Assembly: GCA_000708835.1 (NCBI GenBank)
Contig: DF237219.1
Location: 1 to 64,000 of the forward strand
From: Klebsormidium nitens
Lineage: Eukaryota > Plantae > Klebsormidiophyceae
DNA: 64,000 nt
Reading direction: 5' to 3'
Below, piece by piece: positions 1,045-26,215 of this stretch; position 1 is the stretch's first letter; every line of letters begins with the position of its first letter. Below the pieces are notes generated by a model. It made no database searches. It saw only the letters and a list, made by a program, of their open reading frames with translations, and was not told the DNA's origin. Made by a program: the position numbers and the translations under genes.

Positions 1045-2272
1045 TGCACAAGAAACCAGGAACTGGGGTTTTCACAAGGCCTTTTGCATCAGAGAACCAC
1101 CCTCTCTAGAAACCCGGCAGAAAGTAGATGTGGGTTGGGTGGATTATGCATCAGGGATCTCTAAAATTGAACTGGAATTGAACAGTGGGGCGAATGAAAC
1201 TCTAAACTAATTTCAACTTCCAGCTAGAACGTGCACCGACATGAGTCTTGGGCAAAAGTCCCGCTCTAAGAATCCATCAATCTGCTCATCTGAAATCCTG
1301 ACTAAAGCTCTGAAAGCCCAAGCTTATGTGTGCGTTGCGATGATCTTACTACCACCTTCGATTGGAGAGAAAGGCGGAAGCCCAAGACAAGAGCCAAGAT
1401 TGAAAGAACACGACAAAAATTAGGGTTGTCAAATAAAAGATGACAATCGGGGTGCCATACACCTCAGCGTCACTCTACACCAAAAGACGGAGGATGGTCA
1501 CTTTGATGGAAGGGATGAAAAGTTAGTTTACCTCATGAAACCAACTTGCTTGTGTCAAACCGCGTCTCAACCCCGTCAGCTTCACTTATAGCAAATAAAC
1601 CTACAATGCCTCAGTGCTAGGGCAATGTGAGGTGATTCAGGCTTTGATTGGATCAATCTGCCAAAATGAGAAGCTGCAAACCTAAAGCTTCAAGCAAAAG
1701 AACCAAAGGGCTAGCCAGATCAGCACCCTGGCAGCAGCTTGCCCCTAGCTTGCCCGCACCTTGCCGCCCCCTTGCCGCAGCTTGCAAACGCCTCTGATGT
1801 ATACTATTTGACAATGCCGCTGAAATAGAGGGGAAAGTAAGAATATGCAACGAGTGAAACCTGTGCCACTTTGCACAGCGTCTGTTAACATGAGCTGCAT
1901 AAGCCTAAGGTGCTCTTGGACGCGCAGACGAGCTTGGAAGCCCTTGTAGCGGTTATGTCTATAAGCATCAAGAGTCTTGTCAGTCAGCTGGCGCCGCGTA
2001 TTGCAGTCGGTTTGCCGGTTGTTCCTCCCGGGTCGCGGTGGGGACGACTGGACATATAAGGAGCAAATGCTTGAGTATTGCCCGGTACAGCTGCCAGGAA
2101 GTGCCGTTTAACGAGCCGTAGGTCGCGACCCTGTCACTGGTAACAGTATTGCCGTCAAATCAAACTGGCGGGTATTACGTGTGAGCACTATTTTCGATCG
2201 ACGACATTTCATATTTGAGACGCTGCGTATACATCAGAGCGGCCATATGCGGTCTGAGCTCATATAAGCGGT

Positions 2273-2380
2273 TGGGCCCTACACAATGGCCGTACCCCCC
2301 AAGCCGAACGCAAAGACAACAGTACGAAATTCGACCCGGGTTTTACCAAAATCCGGGCTTTTCCGATCCGGGGTTTAGGG
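2273..2380 (+). promoter_or_regulatory. Putative promoter elements upstream of FIO1 (site II-like TGGGCC and a TTTAGGG)
   Basis: TGGGCC at 2273-2278 and TTTAGGG at 2374-2380, 130-240 bp upstream of ATG 2512. Short motifs that could occur by chance. Confidence 0.25.
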
Positions 2381-2511
2381 AGTCCCGGCGCTTCCCACCC
2401 CACTTGCTACAACCGTAACCGGAGCGGAGTGACAAATGGACAGCTGGCCGCTCGGGCAGCTCACCTGTTTGAGCAAGCTGTTCCGTTTGTCCTGATTTCG
2501 AGGAGGGAGCT

Positions 2512-5500
2512 ATGGAGGCCGCTTCCGCTTCTGACCTGGAGTTTGCGGCAGTAGGCTACAAGGAGCAGCTCGAGCAAGTGAAGAGATTACTGGTTGCTGA
2601 ACCAGGCAATGCTGAATACTTGCAGGTAAGGAGGACAACTGCATTCTGCAATCAGCAAACTCACAAGCAGAATGTAGTGCACTGCAACTGAAAGGGAGTG
2701 CTGATGTACTACCAATTGATGTCGCAGCTGAAAGGGGATGCTGATGTACAGCCAATTGACGTCGAAGCTCGGGTTGCTGCTTGGTGACAGGCAAGCACGG
2801 TTTGCGCAGTATATGATGGTCGTCATCGCAGAGGTGGCACCGTGATTTCGCCCGCTGTTCTTATTGCACCACCCCTTCACTGCATCACATTCTTCTTGCA
2901 GCTGCATGACGAGTTGGTTGAAATCGTCAGCCTCACAGAAGAGCTCCTGAACACCGCACCGCAGATCCTTGAGCAAGCCTTAGAAGCTGGGCATCAAAAT
3001 TTCGAGCTATATCAAGGAGATAGAACTACTGCCGTAGACGCTTCTGACAGCGCTGCCCCAAGCATTGGTCCTTCTTTGCCAGCTTACAATGTAAGGGAGC
3101 AGCAAAGAGCCGAGATTGGGGTGGCTGTTGGAGAGTCGGGTCCGTCTCAAACGCATCAAGAGGATGGGGGGCATCTGGGGCCTTTGCATGGGCATCAGGA
3201 TTGTCCGGAACATAGTGGTCAACACCAGCATCAATTACTGGGAAAGAGAAAACAGATGCATCCTCGAAACAAGTACGCTGACGCGCCACCAGACTTTGAC
3301 CAGCTCGCAGCCAAGTACCCCTCCTTTGCCCCGTATGTGTATCACTCCGCAGCTGGGCGCCCAAACATCGAGTGGTAAGCCTTCTTGTTTCCCGTAGCCG
3401 TAGATGTTTGCATCTTGCAGTCATTTCAAAGAATCTTTGCTATTTGCTGCACCAGCTTTTGGAGACATCTGCCTATGCCCCCCCCAGCAGGTTTCTCGAT
3501 GTTCAAAGGAGAAAATTCCCAAACATGACAGAGGTCTTATTGGTGTGTCCCTTGATGCAGGACTGACTTCAACGCATCTCGGGAGCTGACGCGCGTCCTC
3601 CTCGACCATGATCACGGTGTCAAGTGGTGGATTCCAGATGGCCAATTGTGTCCAACAGTGACAAACCGGGCTAACTACATCCACTGGATTGAAGACCTGC
3701 TGTACCTATCGCCCGCGCCGTGGCATGCCCAGGTAGGGTCCTGTGGAAAAGGAATCCGTTTTGGCCATCCTCAGGAGAGCTACATGGACGAAGCCGATCG
3801 TCTCCTGGATTGTATGCACTTGACGAAAACTTGAAGTGTGTGATTGAGCTAGCTGTAGCAGGGTGGCAAGAATCGAGGTGCTACATTGTGTAGCAATTGA
3901 ATGATGTCTGTTTCGCTTGGAAGTACTCTTGCTCAATTAGAGCAGCAAAGAAAGTCTAAGTAAGTCAATTGAAGCAATCGATGTTTTGTTACTTGATCTT
4001 GCAGGGGCCACAAACGAAAAGCGGACACGTCACCGGGCTTGACATCGGCGTTGGAGCCAATTGCATCTATCCACTCTTAGGTGCAACTTTGAACGGTTGG
4101 AAGCTCGTGGGAACAGGTAAGGCAAGGTCAAAGAACCGAAATTGCGTCAATTGTCTCCAAGGAATTGTCTTGGCCAAGAGACGCACAGTCTGTAATAATT
4201 TCCGATGGAACTGGATCCATTCGACCATGAGAGCTGGCTTCGATCATCGCCTGAGACGAAATTGTTGAAGCGCCGTTGTCGAAGCTGTTTTGTGCTTAGT
4301 CAGTCTTCGTTCTTCAGAGGGCATTCTCATCTCTGCCAGCATCACCATAAAGGATGTCGGCTTTCTAACGTGTCAGCGTATCCAGATTGGAAAGCCGTTG
4401 GTGCTTCTAACCCTTGCACTCGCTTCTTTGCAGACGTTACGCCGGTTGCTCTGACATGGGCCCAGAAAAACGTGGACGCCAACCCGCACCTGGCCCCGCT
4501 GATAGAGATTCGGTCCGCTAAAGTAGAATCAGGTCCAGAACTCGACACCAAGCGAGAGCGTGTGATAGACAAAAAAGAAAGCTCGCATCCGGAGGCAAGT
4601 GGAGGACACAGCCCAGAGGACGGTGGGGCTAACACGACTGGGGGTGAGCACGGGGAAAGTCTTCGCTCAGCTCCTCATAAAGGAAATGGACCTGAAGCAA
4701 GCGCCAGCGAGCGGGGGCCGGAAGAGTCAGCAGACGATGAGGACGCACCGGCCGCACCGCCCCACCCCATTCTGGACGGAGTGCTGCGGCCAGGGGAGTG
4801 CTTCGACTTCTGCATGTGCAATCCCCCTTTTTTCGAGAGCATGGACGAAGCGGCGGCAAACCCGCGTACTGCGTGCGGGGGCACGGAAGCGGAGATGGTG
4901 TACCCGGGGGGGGAGGAGGAGTTCGTGGCGCGCATAATTGCGGACAGCTGTGCGCTCAAGGGGCGCGTGCACTGGTACACCAGCATGGTGGGCAAGAAAG
5001 GCAGCCTCAAGAAATTGGTGGCGCTGCTGCGCAAGAAGCGGGTGAGCGGAATCGTCATTATTGGTTCGACGAACTTTGTGTGGCTCCTACCTTTGGCGCG
5101 TGGGAGGTTTGTGCCGGAATTTTATTGCCTTGACGTTGAAATGAGGGGAATGATTGCCCAGAATTGGAACGAGTAAGGGTATCATTTCTTTTCGCTGGTC
5201 TTTCATCAAGTAGCTTGCGCTATCTGGGAGAACAGAGGAGAAACGCGAAGTTCTTGATTGGGTCCCAGGATCGACCGTTTGATGTTCATCTTCCTGCGAG
5301 TTGACCGTTACTTGCTGGCTGCTTTTGTGACTCCTCAAGCAACAGGTCTTCGTTGCTATTGCGCTGCTTCAAGAACTCATGTCAGAGCCGTGGAAGGTCC
5401 GTCAAGTACGGTTTCAGGAAACGACGCAGTCTTAGGACGTCAAACAAAAATCTCCCAGGCAAGTGATCGACACTTCACAAATTCTCGGGTACCTCACCCC

Positions 5501-6571
5501 AGATCAGCTGGACGATGCGGATCGCTGTGCTCAATTTCCGATTCTGATTCCGTGCAGGTGGCGGCTACAGAAACGACCGAGTTCGTCCAGGGGAAAACCT
5601 CTCGATGGGGCCTAGCGTGGTCTTTCACGCCCAGGAAGATGACAGCCGCCATGAAGGTACGAACGCCTGACACGGTTGGCTCCTTTTTGCCTCCGGTACC
5701 ATCCCGTTGCAACATCAGGGGTTTACTTTCGTCAGCGCTACCTTATTCAAAACAACTTCAGTTTTAGCAAGTTGCCACCCGCAGCGTTCCTGAGATTCCG
5801 GGTTTCCACGTTTCGAGGTGCTCTGGGCCCGAAACAGATGGGATCATAAGGCGACCACAAGTGTAGTACGCTCTTCCTCAAAGGTCACCTTTTTGGTTAT
5901 GGAGTCGGTGACCTTCCCGATGCTGTGGAGTCTGCCTGGATTATCCACAGGCCTACATCTGCAGTGATGAGAGTCGCACAAGCGCCGCAAGTACATGCAA
6001 AAAAAGTAAAATTTTATTACCTGTCGGGGCCACGGGCCCAATACTGGTGGCACGTTCTTTGCTTAAGAGGTCTCTTTCGGGATCTGAAGGTGAATTTTGC
6101 TGTTCGTTCTTGCAGGAGGCGGTAGCGAAGCAGCTGCCGCAGCGCACCAAGATCTCCTTCACCCTGCAGCGACTGGGGCGGCAAACCGCGGCCTGGACCG
6201 TACTGCAAGCGATCCGGGAGGAGCTCCAGCGAGAGCGCGCCACGTGTCAAGTCAACGAGGCGACTTTCGCCCTCCAGGCCCGCATTCCCGCTGGCGCTCT
6301 AACGGTCCCCAGGGGAGAGGCGGATGATAATACGGAGGCAGAAGATACGGGCGAGGCTGGGCCGGAAGAGAAGCGTAGAAGGTTAGAAACAGGTGGAATG
6401 GAGCATGGCGAATTCGCGGTTAAGGTCTCGGTGTTTCAGCAGGCCCCTGGTACCCTGTTGGTGTCGGCCATCTTGACGGAGCAGCGAGTTCCAATAGCCA
6501 CGACGGCTGCTTTCGGAACGTTGTTTGACCGGGTAGAGGAGAAGTTGAGAAAACGCTTCAAGAGTGCTTGA
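2512..6571 (+). CDS. FIO1: U6 snRNA/mRNA m6A methyltransferase METTL16 (plant FIONA1 ortholog) with an N-terminal SPF30-like helical extension
   Basis: Exons 2512-2625, 2902-3374, 3561-3732, 4005-4116, 4434-5041, 5558-5656, 6116-6571, all GT-AG and in phase. Motifs: HPRNKY..PPDF, W.IPDGQLCPTVTNRANYIHWI, GLDIGVGANCIYPLLG (SAM binding), CMCNPPFF (catalytic), WYTSMVGKK, EFVQGKTSRWGLAWSF, and C-terminal VFQQAPGTLLV. Confidence 0.95.
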
Positions 6572-7359
6572 AGCAGCACGTGAAGTCCGTCTTCCTAAGT
6601 CGCATTGTGCACAAGCTTTCACGTTCTATCGCAGCTACGACTTGATTCGTTGTTCGGAAAGGCTGCCAGCCCCCAGAGTCTAAAGTCCCAGAAAGGCGTT
6701 GTACTAGTCGGACGACCTGCCGTTCGTCACCATCCTGCATCGCGATTTCTAACATGGCACCGTCTTAGCATGCTGTGCGGCTGCACCTCACCAGATCGAG
6801 GAATGCTTCAAACGCCCTTGCAAAGTTTCTGACTGCAAGCTGCGCATACATGGTCCGGCGTACTGTACAGCAGCCTGCATGCTCATGCGCCATTTCTTGT
6901 CACACCAATAGGTGGAAGCAAGCATGTCACCGCGCGCGTGTTCATGCAGCCGCAAGTATGCAGATAGCTTCACAAGTGAACTTCGGCGGCGAGAAGGTAC
7001 CATGGTCCATCTTGACGCTACCTGGACACTTATCCAACACGTGTGGTTGCATGCAAGACGCTCGCCGGGTGGAACATAGCGCATGACGGTAGCTGCCCAG
7101 TGTGACTCGAATACCACAATTTAAAGCTTGAATCCAATCTGCCGCGTGCGAGCCCAGTACATCTTGCGCACTCGAAAGCAAGCTTCTAGGTAGGCCGCGG
7201 CAAGACAGGCGCTCAACATAAGAGCCTGTCTACCCGCTGTATTGCGCTTCAGCTTCACTGGACGGACGTGCAGGTTTGTGAAACTCGAGTCCGACTCTGA
7301 ATCAAGCTGTAAGCCCCCCTTATACACCCCGCTACAATGAAGACTATGCAAATTGGCGC

Positions 7360-8835
7360 TCATTGTTCGTTGACGTCAAAGCGGCGAGTATCAGCGTTGT
7401 CGGACCTTGTCGCTACAATAGTACACCCAGTCCCTTTGGGCGAATTGGATTTTGACAGATCCCCTGATTCAAACTCATCAAAGATGTAACCTGCAGAGCG
7501 CCTATCCAAAGCAGTGAAACGTTGTACGACAGAAAGGATACTTGTGAAGCACATTCAAATTTGAGACATTCTGGGGGACTTATGCAACTTAGAAAGCGCC
7601 TGGTCCATAGTGGGGCACTCTCAATAAGAGAAATCATCAGCATGGGGGTCTGATTGGAAGCGGGTCGGGATACTGAGCAGTTTTGTAATCAACGCTCAAT
7701 CTCACGCAGACTGGCGGCTTATTTTTCGGATAGAATAAGGCGATCTACGCTTGCTAGCCCAGGTCTTTCCTCGGCGCGCGGATCTACTTGCATCATGAAT
7801 CATTGCTTCCACGGAAAGTTAAGACGAAGACTTGTCTGTCTCACCTTGCAGCGCTTTCTTGGCGGTGGCCGCGCTCGCGTGACTTTCAAACTCGACGAAG
7901 GCGATTGGGTATTCTGCCGCACTCTACAGGAAGATCAAGACCCGCATAAGGCAACGCACATGTCAGTACCATTCTGACAGAAGCTGATCCCACAAGTTGC
8001 AAATTTTCATATCTGTTTGAATGTTGGAAGCAATTGCCGCAAGAACGCGCCGGGAAGGCGAAACTGACGGATTCGAGGGAGCTCGTGACAAATGACGGTC
8101 GAGGACTTACCGTCAATCGAGTCAAGCTGCGGTATCCGATGAAGGGTCGGAAAATGTTGTACTCTGGAAGATCAAGGTTTGACTTCAAAAGGAGAGTCGG
8201 CCATTCGTTCGTAGCTAAGACCGGCCAGATGAGAGGCGCAAAGAAGAATCGACTACGGTGAAAGACACGAGGATCAAGGCAAATAGGCGGCTGGCTTAGG
8301 ATCCAAGCGAGAAGCCGTTCTGAGTGTGTGGAGAAGTCGGATTTTGAACAGCGTGAATTCTCGAGGTCAAGCTCATTGGAAGCTGAGCAAGGATACGCGC
8401 TAGCTCCCTCCTCTGAACGTCAGGCGGAAACCCCTTGACGAACAGGATTCGAACCCCGCGACCTGGACGAGACTCTGCTGACGCAGTGGGAGCGCCGGTG
8501 GTCTGATAGGCATGCACCGCGGCATTGGGGGAAGGAGGGCCCGGAGTGGGTGGGCAAAAAGCTGGAGCCCAGCCATCTGGAAGGCGCAAAAAGCCATAGC
8601 TGCCAGATAGATTCCAATCCAAATAATTAATTGGGTAATATGGAGTTCCGTTGTAGTGACTTTGACACCTTAGCGTAGCGTTGTTACCAGGCGACAGATT
8701 CTGTGGGGTGGCTGTGAACCGTTGGCTGACTCGACGTTGAGGACTGACGGCACGAAATAGAGTACGACTACAATCGCGAGCTGTGGCAGAGAAGCCTTCT
8801 ATTCTGATCCGCCTGGCGAGCTCTGGCCCTTGCAT
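7360..8835 (-). CDS. Single-RRM RNA-binding protein (plant NSR / RBPMS-like)
   Basis: Exons ~8835-8397, ~8167-8111, 7923-7845, 7490-7360 give RILFVKGFPPDVQRRELA..NIFRPFIGYRSL..PIAFVEFESHASAATAKKALQGYIFDE (RNP2 and RNP1). The 5' end and exon 2 boundaries are less certain. Confidence 0.75.
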
Positions 8836-24749: not shown

Positions 24750-26215
24750 ATGGAAGCTGCAGACAAGAAGCATGTGAGGGCAAAGCAGTGGTCGCCAGAG
24801 GGGACAGAAGAGCTCAAGCAGCGCCTGCGAGCTTACGAGGCCCAGCAGCTGTCCTCACTGGTGCAGAAGACGCCCAACCCAGACTCTGCCGGGCTTGAAG
24901 AAGAGAAGAAACCGTCCAAGAAGGCTTCCGTGCTTGTGTTGCTGTTTCAGGGGCCGCAGAATGAGTTGCGGGTTCTCCTCACGGAAAGGTCAAAGGGTCT
25001 TTCTTCACATGGTGGTAGGCAGCCCCCCAGACCAAGTTGTCTAATGGGTTTCTCATTGAGCTGACAATTGTCATGTGTGAGATACATCGTCTCAGCAGAT
25101 TGTACGGTACTGAGTAACCTGGTTCCAAAGTAGTCGGTTTCTCTAAAAGATCTGGGCTCCACAGTTTCTATCACTGGTCAGTGCTGCAGTTTACTTGTCA
25201 CTCCATTGTTAGAGTGCAGATGTCCTTGCTGTCTCTCACAGGTGAAGTTGCCCTTCCTGGGGGCAAGCAAGACGAGAGCGATGCTGATGAAGTGGCCGCC
25301 GCTTTGCGAGAAGCCAAGGAGGAGGTTGGCCTGGATCCAACGAATGTGGAGGTCCTCACAACCTTCGAGCCCTTCCTCAGTAAGGTACAAAATACAGCCG
25401 CCCCAGTGGATGAAGTCTGGGGTCAGTATCCTGGTAACTTGAATAAGGAGAATGCATAGTGTGCTATTTTGAACACTAGATCCCTTGGGGAGTCAGGCTA
25501 CTGACGTGTGCAGTAGACTATCAATTCGAACTCCACTGGTAGCATTTGGTTAACACCCACTTCTGTTGTCGATCTCTTTTACAGCACCTTTTGCTCGTCA
25601 CGCCTGTCATTGGGTCCCCCATAGATCCTGAAAGCTTCAAGCGTACACCCAACTCAGGAGAAGTCGAAACCATCTTCGATGCTCCCCTCGAAATGTTTCT
25701 TGAGGTAAGCAACGCTTCAGGTCTGCCCCCCTTGTAATACACGCTGGCGCTTTTCTACCGAGGAACCACTCCCGTCTGCCAAGAGAAACGGCTCGTAGTT
25801 ATTTGCAGTCACAAGCCCTGCAAACAATCTGCCACCACCAATTGCTTCGTTAGTTGCGTTATGCTCACTCGCTGGACACAGGAGGCTTCTCGGCCTCCTC
25901 GAAGTTTGTACGTATGCAAGCAGGCTTTGGGTGTTGCACTTCATGTTCAAATTGATTCTCTGCTTGCTTCTCCAGGAAGAAGGGCATCGGCATAAGGATA
26001 TCGAGATGGTAAATTTCCCGTTCCGACTGCATTACTTTGACTACACAGACGGCACGCGACAATATAACATCTGGGGCTTAACGGCATCCATATTGATCAG
26101 GATAGCTAGCACAGTTTTCAATAGGGAGCCAGCGTTTGAGGAGTTTCATCCCACGTTACCAAGCTACAGAGAAATTCTCGTTGAAATGTTGAAAAGAAAC
26201 CTCTTCGTCCTGTGA
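24750..26215 (+). CDS. CoA-pyrophosphatase-type Nudix hydrolase (NUDT7/8, plant NUDX11/15/22-like)
   Basis: Four exons give ASVLVLLF..VLLTERSKGLSSHG|GEVALPGG (CoAse motif), the Nudix box AALREAKEEVGL, and IWGLTASILI. An upstream exon is possible. Confidence 0.92.

What the first reader, a model, noticed from the sequence alone, without database searches (positions are those of the whole stretch)
2512..2965. METTL16/FIONA1 carries an N-terminal SPF30 (SMNDC1)-like helical hairpin
Seen: exon 1 (ATG 2512, CAG|GTAAG at 2625) splices in phase to exon 2, giving YKEQLEQVKRLLVAEPGNAEYLQLHDELVEIVSLTEELLNTA. Established (recalled): plant SPF30 begins ...YKEQLEQVRQLLSEDPRNSEYADMEKELKEVIALTEE..., ZGPAT has a similar start, and Arabidopsis FIO1 starts almost directly at HPRNKY. 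SPF30 bridges U2 snRNP and the U4/U6.U5 tri-snRNP, while METTL16 methylates U6 snRNA. Inference: an exon-shuffled fusion that could tether the U6 m6A writer to the spliceosome.
Basis: partly seen in the sequence, partly recalled or inferred. Interest (0 to 1): 0.75.

Follow-up and report, generated by a model that had tools for sequence, protein, structure and literature searches.

The report
Algal U6 methyltransferase with SPF30-type hairpin
This green alga's enzyme that methylates the spliceosome's U6 RNA carries, on a flexible tether, a small two-helix module that is clearly related to the front end of the splicing factor SPF30; many other green algae have the same add-on, land plants do not, and what it binds is unknown.

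Summary
RNA-derived contigs from four studies join ATG-exon 1 (2512-2625) to exon 2 (2902) in frame. They give a 7-exon, 677-aa METTL16/FIO1 gene.

The SPF30 likeness is also real. I recovered algal SPF30-type genes (hairpin + Tudor + basic tail) from public contigs.
- The window's exon 1 matches their hairpin profile: hhalign probability 97.7%, E 2e-12. Exon 2 continues the match in register.
- A METTL16-hairpin profile built without the window matches the SPF30 hairpin profile: probability 97%, score 50.7. Column shuffles reach at most 13.
- AlphaFold2 gives the same fold for both types: a 24-residue helix, a 4-residue turn, then a second helix.

The fusion is not a local exon shuffle.
- The same N-terminal hairpin sits on METTL16 of Chlorophyceae, Trebouxiophyceae, Ulvophyceae and Mesotaenium.
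- It is under purifying selection in a sister species.
- Its intron position differs from that in the algal SPF30 genes.
- The annotated proteins I saw from four land plants, Mesostigma, Spirogloea and Closterium lack it.

Tethering to the spliceosome remains an inference. The ZGPAT comparison could not be tested. The scan had no earlier finding of this on other DNA.

The parts
2372..2511 (+). 5' UTR (minimum extent), holding a 19-codon upstream ORF at 2436-2495
   Evidence: An RNA-derived contig of run X1 covers 2372-2625. The upstream ORF was translated.
2512..2625 (+). Coding exon 1 (38 aa): helix 1, the EPGN turn and the first five residues of helix 2 of the hairpin
   Evidence: Translation. 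Joint 2625^2902 in four runs. hhalign against the SPF30 hairpin profile gives probability 97.7%, E 2e-12. 82% identical in L026, with dN/dS 0.18.
2626..2901 (+). Intron 1 (GTAAGG..TTGCAG, 276 nt). It holds a 40-nt tandem repeat at 2684-2769, and a retained-intron contig is present in all four runs.
   Evidence: If retained, the reading frame stops at 2691.
2902..2988 (+). Start of exon 2: the rest of hairpin helix 2 (LHDELVEIVSLTEELLNTAPQILEQALEA)
   Evidence: Translation. hhalign against the SPF30 profile gives E 4e-4, colinear with exon 1. dN/dS against L026 is 0.05. Conserved in L028.
2989..3243 (+). Linker of about 85 aa, low in complexity (rich in G/S/P/Q/H/E) and poorly conserved
   Evidence: Translation. 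It diverges from L026 and cannot be aligned, with insertions, in L028. Homologues have linkers of 16-88 aa. Disorder is inferred from composition; it was not modelled.
3244..3374 (+). End of exon 2: the basic N-terminal RNA-binding segment of the methyltransferase (KRKQMHPRNKY...). The alternative Met lies at 3256.
   Evidence: Pfam PF05971 positions 4-43. Human METTL16 residues 6-46, E 3e-6.
3561..3732 (+). Exon 3, methyltransferase domain
4005..4116 (+). Exon 4, methyltransferase domain (SAM-binding GxGxxxIYPLLG)
4434..5041 (+). Exon 5, methyltransferase domain with an acidic/Gly-rich insert of about 80 aa and the catalytic NPPF at 4820-4831
5558..5656 (+). Exon 6
   Evidence: 97-100% identical in L026 and L027.
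6116..6571 (+). Exon 7, C-terminal domain and stop codon. The 3' UTR runs to about 6755.

Best explanation
SHOWN. The locus is the orthologue of the U6 snRNA m6A methyltransferase METTL16/FIO1. It is transcribed and spliced as seven exons into a 677-aa protein. Its first ~65 residues, encoded by exon 1 and the start of exon 2, belong to the same sequence family as the N-terminal two-helix hairpin of the splicing factor SPF30/SMNDC1. In homologues the fold is a 24-residue helix, a 4-residue (D/E)PxN turn and a second helix. The module is joined to the basic RNA-binding N-terminus of the methyltransferase by a poorly conserved linker of about 85 aa. The hairpin-linker-METTL16 architecture is old in the green lineage. 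It is present in Chlorophyceae, Trebouxiophyceae, Ulvophyceae, Mesotaenium and this alga's relatives. It is absent from the four annotated land-plant proteins I examined. The hairpin is under purifying selection.

INFERRED. The hairpin arose as a copy of the 5' part of SPF30, or both derive from one ancestral module, early in green-algal evolution. It works as a protein-protein docking module. It would bind the same, still unidentified, partner as SPF30's hairpin, or pair with another such hairpin. That would hold the U6 m6A writer on a flexible tether near snRNP/spliceosome assembly or recycling sites. Nothing here shows what it binds.

The confidence given is for the whole statement. For the shown part alone it is about 0.9. 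For the docking or tether function it is about 0.35-0.4.
For: - Gene model and expression.
- Hairpin in 14 or more METTL16 homologues, with taxa.
- Algal SPF30-type genes recovered (hairpin + Tudor + basic tail, 293-299 aa). Tudor hits appear. The nearest named ESM Atlas clusters are 'SPF30' / SMN_Tudor at 0.91-0.93.
- Homology-level similarity: a METTL16-hairpin HMM built without the window scores SPF30 hairpins at 39-45 bits. hhalign of A8 against A7 gives probability 97%, E 9e-11, score 50.7; the reversed profile scores 9.6 and 200 column shuffles reach at most 13. Window exon 1 against A7 gives probability 97.7%; the start of exon 2 aligns colinearly.
- Same predicted fold. Human SMNDC1 has two interacting N-terminal helices at 2-25 and 30-52 (PMC10432564).
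- Selection: dN/dS 0.18 and 0.05. The hairpin is conserved while the linker drifts. Linker length varies between 16 and 88 aa.
- SPF30 is a spliceosome assembly factor that contacts U2AF and the U4/U6 protein Prp3 (PMC12393150, citing Little & Jurica 2008).
Against: - No partner of the SPF30 hairpin is known from what I could read, so the tethering step has no direct support.
- METTL16 is thought to act on free U6 snRNA, whereas SPF30 acts at tri-snRNP recruitment. A shared partner need not be spliceosomal.
- The algal SPF30 identification rests on architecture, weak Tudor hits and language-model look-alikes. Pfam's SMN_Tudor model did not hit, and no named SPF30 was retrieved.
- The hairpin profile also resembles one consensus TPR turn.
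- Several streptophyte algae lack the hairpin in their annotated proteins. That could be loss, or first exons missed by annotation.
- Intron-1-retained RNA in all four runs means part of the transcripts cannot encode the hairpin form.
- The window's own spliced N-terminus was not folded or searched as one piece.
Confidence: 0.5

Rival explanations
1. The hairpin is a recent, lineage-specific acquisition or gene conversion from this alga's own SPF30 gene. The hairpins of chlorophyte METTL16 would then be older or separate copies.
For: - The window's pieces score higher with the SPF30 hairpin HMM (37.7 + 13.8 bits) than with the chlorophyte METTL16 hairpin HMM (26.0 + 4.4 bits).
- Helix 2 carries the SPF30 motif E(V/I)(I/V)xLTE(D/E)L, which other METTL16 hairpins lack.
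- YKEQLEQ and RLLVAEPxNAEY are identical to the SPF30 of locus L017.
Against: - A hairpin sits at the same N-terminal position, followed by the same kind of linker, in four or more green-algal classes including a streptophyte alga.
- Three related species share it with the same splice sites.
- The intron position differs from that of the algal SPF30 genes.
- SPF30 hairpins score like a slowly evolving consensus of all METTL16 hairpins, at 42-47 bits. Slow divergence in this lineage therefore explains the pattern equally well.
Confidence: 0.15
2. The module acts within METTL16 rather than as a spliceosome tether. It could be a homodimerisation element (two hairpins forming a four-helix bundle). 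Or it could be a regulatory cap that folds back on the basic N-terminal RNA-binding segment.
For: - Antiparallel hairpins commonly pair into four-helix bundles. The fold search finds only generic hairpins and bundles.
- The module lies directly upstream of the K/R-rich RNA-binding N-terminus.
- The flexible linker would allow it to fold back.
Against: - The same module sits on SPF30, which has no methyltransferase domain. An element specific to the enzyme is therefore unlikely.
- No test of oligomerisation or intramolecular contact was possible. No multimer prediction was available, and the prediction tool reports no PAE (predicted aligned error).
Confidence: 0.2
3. The likeness to SPF30 is convergence on a generic TPR-like helix-turn-helix, with no common origin and no shared partner.
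For: The hairpin profiles hit designed consensus TPR proteins and BepA/Fis1 TPRs through the motif AL..(D/E)P.NAE. There is no Pfam family for the module.
Against: - The match to SPF30 runs over 50 columns and both helices, not only the turn. It scores 50.7 against at most 13 for shuffles.
- About 60% identity to some SPF30 hairpins.
- Both modules are at the extreme N-terminus and have the same helix lengths.
- The individual TPR matches cover about 22 residues, at per-domain E 0.4-15.
Confidence: 0.07
4. The hairpin form is a minor product. Most functional enzyme starts at the Met just before HPRNKY (3256), produced from intron-1-retained or internally initiated RNA.
For: - An intron-1-retained contig (2596-2924) is present in all four runs. 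Other introns show retained pieces only sporadically.
- Retention stops the frame at 2691.
- A Met directly precedes HPRNKY.
Against: - The spliced joint is present in all four runs.
- The hairpin codons are under purifying selection and conserved across classes.
- A downstream start would lie more than 700 nt into the RNA, behind several AUGs.
- Contigs cannot give isoform ratios.
Confidence: 0.08

Closest known systems
METTL16 / FIONA1 / METT-10 / Mtl16 (U6 snRNA A43 N6-methyltransferase, Pfam PF05971)
   Same: The whole catalytic part is shared. This covers the basic N-terminal RNA-binding segment (HPRNKY), the Rossmann-fold domain with NPPF, and a C-terminal domain.
   Different: Human METTL16 and the four land-plant proteins I examined begin at or within about 20 residues of HPRN. 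This protein has about 155 extra N-terminal residues, a hairpin plus a linker. It also has an acidic insert of about 80 aa inside the domain.
SPF30 / SMNDC1 N-terminal 'tandem alpha-helical' domain
   Same: Both sit at the extreme N-terminus. Both have a helix of about 24 residues, a 4-residue turn and a second helix. The sequence profiles match in register. [quoted passage not shown]
   Different: In SPF30 the hairpin is followed by a Tudor domain that reads dimethyl-arginine, then a basic tail. Here a methyltransferase follows. The function of the hairpin is not established in either protein.
Hairpin-bearing METTL16 of other green algae (Polytomella, Gonium, Chlorella ohadii, Auxenochlorella, Ostreobium, Mesotaenium)
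   Same: The same architecture of hairpin, variable linker and METTL16.
   Different: Their hairpins are only 20-38% identical to the window's and have drifted towards Ala/Leu-rich helices. The window's hairpin and its relatives' hairpins stay much closer to the SPF30 type. The databases name them only U6 methyltransferase or '23S rRNA methyltransferase'. I found no description of the N-terminal module.
Tetratricopeptide repeat (TPR)
   Same: Helix-turn-helix with the AL..DP.NAE turn motif.
   Different: There is a single unit rather than a tandem array. The helices are about 24 residues or more, against about 14 in a TPR. The matches cover only about 22 residues.
ZGPAT N-terminus
   Same: I recall a YRAQLQQVE...LIELTE-type start. 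I retrieved no sequence with the tools.
   Different: Not tested here.

Membership tests
METTL16/FIO1 U6 m6A methyltransferase | Methyltransf_10 (PF05971) domain over its whole length | tested here: met
   Exon-by-exon hits cover profile positions 4-273 of 299, with E 8e-5 to 5e-23. 1796 homologues in the representative library.
METTL16/FIO1 U6 m6A methyltransferase | Basic N-terminal RNA-binding segment aligned to human METTL16 residues about 5-46 | tested here: met
   KRKQMHPRNKYADAPPDFDQLAAKYPSF aligns with 6b91 residues 6-46, E 3e-6.
METTL16/FIO1 U6 m6A methyltransferase | Catalytic NPPF motif | tested here: met
   CMCNPPFFES lies at window 4820-4831.
METTL16/FIO1 U6 m6A methyltransferase | Methylates A43 of U6 snRNA | not testable with these tools
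   This needs an enzyme assay or m6A mapping in a mutant.
SPF30/SMNDC1 (whole protein) | Central SMN-type Tudor domain after the hairpin | tested here: not met
   A linker and a methyltransferase follow the hairpin. There is no Tudor hit in any exon. The gene is not an SPF30; it shares only the N-terminal module.
SPF30-type N-terminal hairpin module | Sequence-profile match to SPF30 hairpins, in register over both helices | tested here: met
   Exon 1 gives probability 97.7%, E 2e-12. The start of exon 2 gives E 4e-4 and is colinear. The family-level comparison gives probability 97% with shuffle controls. The SPF30 set consists of algal proteins identified by architecture, weak Tudor hits and Atlas look-alikes, not of named reference proteins.
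SPF30-type N-terminal hairpin module | Two antiparallel helices at the extreme N-terminus | tested here: inconclusive
   AlphaFold2 models of a METTL16 homologue (H2-25, H30-59, pLDDT 92.8) and of an algal SPF30 (H9-32, H37-60, pLDDT 91.6) agree. The window's own hairpin spans an intron and was not folded as a joined model, so its fold is inferred from the alignment.
SPF30-type N-terminal hairpin module | Shared binding partner or function | not testable with these tools
   No partner of the SPF30 hairpin is reported in the papers I could read (PMC10432564, PMC12398788, PMC12393150).
TPR repeat proteins | Tandem array of three or more 34-residue repeats | tested here: not met
   There is one hairpin only. 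The matches to designed TPRs cover about 22 residues around the turn. Pfam TPR models hit 2 of 15 hairpins weakly.
ZGPAT | N-terminal helical segment similar to SPF30's | not tested
   None of the three word-index searches returned a ZGPAT sequence.

The most novel reading that the evidence does not exclude
The SPF30-type hairpin is a portable address tag for one site in the snRNP/spliceosome cycle. Green algae would use it to place the U6 m6A writer at that site. On this reading U6 methylation in these organisms is coupled to U4/U6 or tri-snRNP assembly or recycling rather than acting only on free U6. Land plants and animals would have lost or replaced this coupling. Regulated retention of intron 1 could switch between the tethered and the free enzyme.
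Probability: 0.2. Interest if true: 0.75.

Novelty: new variant of a known kind. Interest (0 to 1): 0.5.

Why it matters
The N-terminal hairpin of SPF30/SMNDC1 is conserved from algae to humans, but the papers I could read give it no function. The same module on a second protein of the U6/spliceosome world is a domain-sharing clue. Whatever it binds is probably relevant to both proteins, and the two hairpins can serve as parallel baits to find it.

It also bears on METTL16 biology. In a large part of the green lineage the U6 m6A writer has a dedicated interaction module that the studied enzymes (human, worm, fission yeast, Arabidopsis) lack. Results from those models on how the enzyme finds U6 may therefore not transfer.

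On the practical side, gene models that start at the Met before HPRNKY may be missing a real first exon.

Tried and rejected
- Pfam on exon 1 and on 15 hairpins found no family, only weak TPR-type hits.
- PDB sequence searches with exon 1, with the METTL16 hairpin profile and with the SPF30 hairpin profile hit only designed or natural TPR turns. No solved SPF30 hairpin appeared.
- Foldseek of the hairpin model against PDB returned generic hairpins, none with E <= 0.001.
- ESM Atlas with a 62-aa hairpin gave no usable hit.
- The word-index protein search was used three times.
  - The profile of 14 hairpins found only more METTL16 fragments.
  - The profile of 4 hairpins gave one borderline hit, P0161 at E 3.1. 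This turned out to be the lead to algal SPF30.
  - The P0161 hairpin region found only itself and a close relative.
  - No named SPF30 or ZGPAT was ever retrieved. The index needs shared 5-mers and a length window, so these blanks mean little.
- The representative library does not hold this gene's full protein; its best hit is a 196-aa fragment from a sister species. No database id for the spliced protein was therefore available.
- I looked for the METTL16 target motif UACAGAGAA in the gene. There is none, and the window-wide count is at chance. The UACAG in the intron-1 repeat is not the nonamer.
- Rfam on the window found nothing. The intron-1 RNA fold is not unusual, z -1.6.
- Little & Jurica 2008 and Meister 2001, which may map SPF30 interaction regions, are not held in the library.
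- All window comparisons were made exon by exon and summed by hand.
Full report
**1. What is in the sequence**

On the + strand, ATG 2512 opens a 114-nt exon that ends CAG|GTAAGG at 2625. After a 276-nt intron, the acceptor TTGCAG is followed by exon 2 at 2902, in phase 0. The protein therefore reads MEAASASDLEFAAVGYKEQLEQVKRLLVAEPGNAEYLQ | LHDELVEIVSLTEELLNTAPQ....

Exon 2 runs through about 85 residues rich in G, S, P, Q, H and E into KRKQMHPRNKYADAPPDF. That stretch aligns with residues 6-46 of human METTL16 (E 3e-6). Pfam PF05971 (Methyltransf_10) matches exons 2, 3, 4 and 5 in order, covering profile positions 4-273. The catalytic NPPF lies at 4820-4831.

**2. Is exon 1 real?**

I found 20 public runs that hold the stretch and laid four of them, from four studies, on 2000-7500. 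Their contigs skip six introns, all GT..AG, so they derive from spliced RNA.

The gene model is:
- exon 1: 2512-2625
- exon 2: 2902-3374
- exon 3: 3561-3732
- exon 4: 4005-4116
- exon 5: 4434-5041
- exon 6: 5558-5656
- exon 7: 6116-6571

This gives 677 codons plus stop. The 5' UTR reaches at least 2372 and the 3' UTR about 6755.

The 2625^2902 joint is present in all four runs. Its junction-specific contig is short, with 23 unique plus 7 ambiguous letters on one side. The reason is that an intron-1-retained contig (2596-2924) is also present in all four runs and breaks the assembly graph on both sides. Contigs cannot show whether there is also an internal start, and they cannot give isoform ratios.

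A sister species (Logan contig L026) has all seven exons with the same splice sites. Its exon 1 is 82% identical at protein level. dN/dS is 0.18 for exon 1 and 0.05 for helix 2, compared with 0.00 for exon 3 and 0.13 for exon 7.

A more distant relative (L028) keeps helix 2 (LHADLVEVVNLTEELLDTAP) while its linker has insertions and cannot be aligned. The hairpin is therefore coding sequence under selection, and the linker behaves as a free tether.

**3. Is the extension peculiar to this genome?**

No. A full HMMER search of 1.84 billion representatives with exon 5 gave 1796 homologues. Among the best 150, a local iterative search seeded with the N-terminus of P0131 found the same two-helix segment at the N-terminus of at least 14 proteins.

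Sources named in the collection:

| Protein | Species | Class |
|---|---|---|
| P0131 | Polytomella parva | Chlorophyceae |
| P0113 | Gonium pectorale | Chlorophyceae |
| P0079 | Chlorella ohadii | Trebouxiophyceae |
| P0030 | Auxenochlorella protothecoides | Trebouxiophyceae |
| P0048 | Ostreobium quekettii | Ulvophyceae |
| P0019 | Mesotaenium endlicherianum | Zygnematophyceae |

The linker between hairpin and HPR(N/S) varies from 16 to 88 residues.

The annotated proteins I looked up from four land plants (Taxus, Heliosperma, Ceratopteris, Adiantum) start within about 20 residues of HPRNKY. So do those of Mesostigma and Spirogloea and one Closterium protein. A second Closterium protein (P0083) has a 60-residue N-terminus without a hairpin. 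For the algae this may reflect missed first exons, because a Met often precedes HPRN.

**4. Is it SPF30-like?**

There is no Pfam family for the module. The only hits in PDB are the turn region of designed or natural TPRs.

The word-index search with a four-row hairpin profile returned one borderline protein, P0161 (26 bits). It is an exon-level ORF on a Logan contig, L001. Read across its exons, that gene encodes four parts:
- MAEEEGQSADEMARNLASYREQLAQ | VDELLAAEPGNAEYLDVKESLTEVIALTEDLLAST
- an Ala-rich linker
- a Tudor-like segment
- a basic tail ending ...SSWQNF...SMFAVPEGGKVGVVGSG

A scan of metagenome contigs with the tail found 23 more loci. Several hold intronless ORFs of 293-299 aa with the same layout.

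Evidence that these are SPF30:
- The layout and length match published descriptions. Arabidopsis SPF30 is 300 aa with an N-terminal coiled coil, a central Tudor domain and a low-complexity C-terminus (PMC12393150). Human SMNDC1 has N-terminal helices at 2-25 and 30-52 followed by the Tudor domain at 64-128 (PMC10432564).
- There are weak Tudor hits: Pfam TUDOR at E 0.007, TDRD1 Tudor at E 0.0015 and SPF30 Tudor 4a4f at E 0.5.
- The three nearest named ESM Atlas clusters all carry SMN_Tudor. One is a chlorophyte 'Tudor domain-containing protein' at 0.93. [quoted passage not shown]

Pfam's SMN_Tudor model itself did not hit, so this identification is good but not formal.

The comparisons gave these results:
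- An HMM of METTL16 hairpins built without the window scores the SPF30 hairpins at 39-45 bits among 599 ORFs.
- hhalign of the METTL16 hairpin alignment (A8, no window rows) against the SPF30 hairpin alignment (A7) gives probability 97%, E 9e-11, score 50.7 over 50 columns. The reversed profile scores 9.6. Two hundred column shuffles average 7.5 with a maximum of 13.0.
- Window exon 1 against A7 gives probability 97.7%, E 2e-12, with columns 14-37 matching 17-40. The start of exon 2 gives E 4e-4, with columns 3-21 matching 44-62, which continues the exon 1 alignment.
- Read by eye against locus L017, exon by exon, YKEQLEQ and RLLVAEPxNAEY are identical. About 26 of 42 positions match.
- AlphaFold2 gives H2-25/H30-59 for a METTL16 hairpin (pLDDT 92.8) and H9-32/H37-60 for an SPF30 hairpin (pLDDT 91.6).

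The likeness is therefore at the level of homology and extends well beyond the TPR-like turn.

**5. Origin**

The window's hairpin scores higher with the SPF30 HMM (37.7 + 13.8 bits) than with the chlorophyte METTL16-hairpin HMM (26.0 + 4.4 bits). SPF30 hairpins in turn score 42-47 bits with the METTL16 HMM, as a slowly evolving consensus would.

Two readings fit these numbers. One is a single ancient copy that this lineage has kept conservative. The other is a later conversion from SPF30. I favour the ancient copy for three reasons:
- The architecture is shared across classes.
- Three related species have the same exon structure.
- The intron inside the hairpin (after AEYLQ) is not the SPF30 intron, which lies after EQLxQ.

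This alga's own SPF30 could not be retrieved, so the question stays open.

**6. Function**

This part is inference. SPF30 is needed to bring the tri-snRNP to the prespliceosome, and it contacts U2AF and Prp3 (PMC12393150, citing work I could not read). The papers I could read describe its hairpin only as a predicted ordered element (PMC10432564, PMC12398788).

The module is conserved and N-terminal, and it sits on a variable, low-complexity linker in front of the RNA-binding N-terminus of a U6-modifying enzyme. That arrangement is most simply read as a docking module. My estimates are:
- about 0.35-0.4 that it targets the enzyme to an snRNP or spliceosome-related partner shared with SPF30;
- about 0.2 that it acts within METTL16, through dimerisation or as a regulatory cap;
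- smaller odds for convergence, or for the hairpin form being a minor product.

**7. Limits**

- All window comparisons were made exon by exon.
- ZGPAT was not tested.
- The organism is coded in the run table. The closest named METTL16 relatives are land plants and streptophyte algae, so it is probably a streptophyte alga.
- I found no paper that mentions this module on METTL16.

Noticed in passing
window 2596-2924: A contig that retains intron 1 is present in all four RNA-derived runs beside the spliced joint. For the other introns only scattered partial pieces appear (introns 4 and 5). With intron 1 retained, the frame from ATG 2512 stops at 2691 after 59 aa. This could be regulated retention that switches the hairpin form off, or simply a slowly spliced first intron.
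   Followed up: partly
window 2684-2769: A 40-nt tandem repeat of 2.2 copies, 84% matching, lies inside intron 1. Each unit contains GCTGATGTAC(A/T)(G/A)CCAATTGA. The intron's fold is not unusually stable (z -1.6).
   Followed up: partly
window 2436-2495: A 19-codon upstream ORF (MDSWPLGQLTCLSKLFRLS*) lies in the 5' UTR. It is out of frame with the main ATG and ends 17 nt before it. It lies within the transcribed region of run X1.
   Followed up: no
window 4520-4770 (inside exon 5): An insert of about 80 residues, acidic and Gly/Ser/Pro-rich, interrupts the methyltransferase domain between Pfam positions of about 135 and 167. Its sequence is variable in the relatives L026 and L027.
   Followed up: no
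L028 224-292 and 1037-1078: In a related species, short degenerate copies of the start of exon 2 (NLTEELLNIAPGVLEAALQKKYQ) and of its end (SFAHYVYHSAANRP) lie in the flanking introns. This suggests local duplication around the hairpin exon.
   Followed up: no
L003-L025 (marine metagenome contigs), e.g. L012 3491-4375: Marine pico-algal SPF30-type genes fall into two kinds. Some are intronless. Others have one intron exactly after EQLxQ in helix 1. Their Tudor domain is divergent enough to escape Pfam SMN_Tudor.
   Followed up: partly
P0113 (Gonium pectorale KXZ55155.1), P0015, P0052, P0130: There are database naming problems. The Gonium model of 1297 aa fuses the hairpin-METTL16 to a beta-amylase, and UniRef names it 'Beta-amylase'. 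JGI/IMG names many eukaryotic METTL16 proteins '23S rRNA (adenine1618-N6)-methyltransferase'.
   Followed up: no
window 26165-26173: This is the only exact UACAGAGAA (the METTL16 target nonamer) in the window, on the + strand. The count with up to one mismatch is at chance level. I did not examine its context.
   Followed up: no
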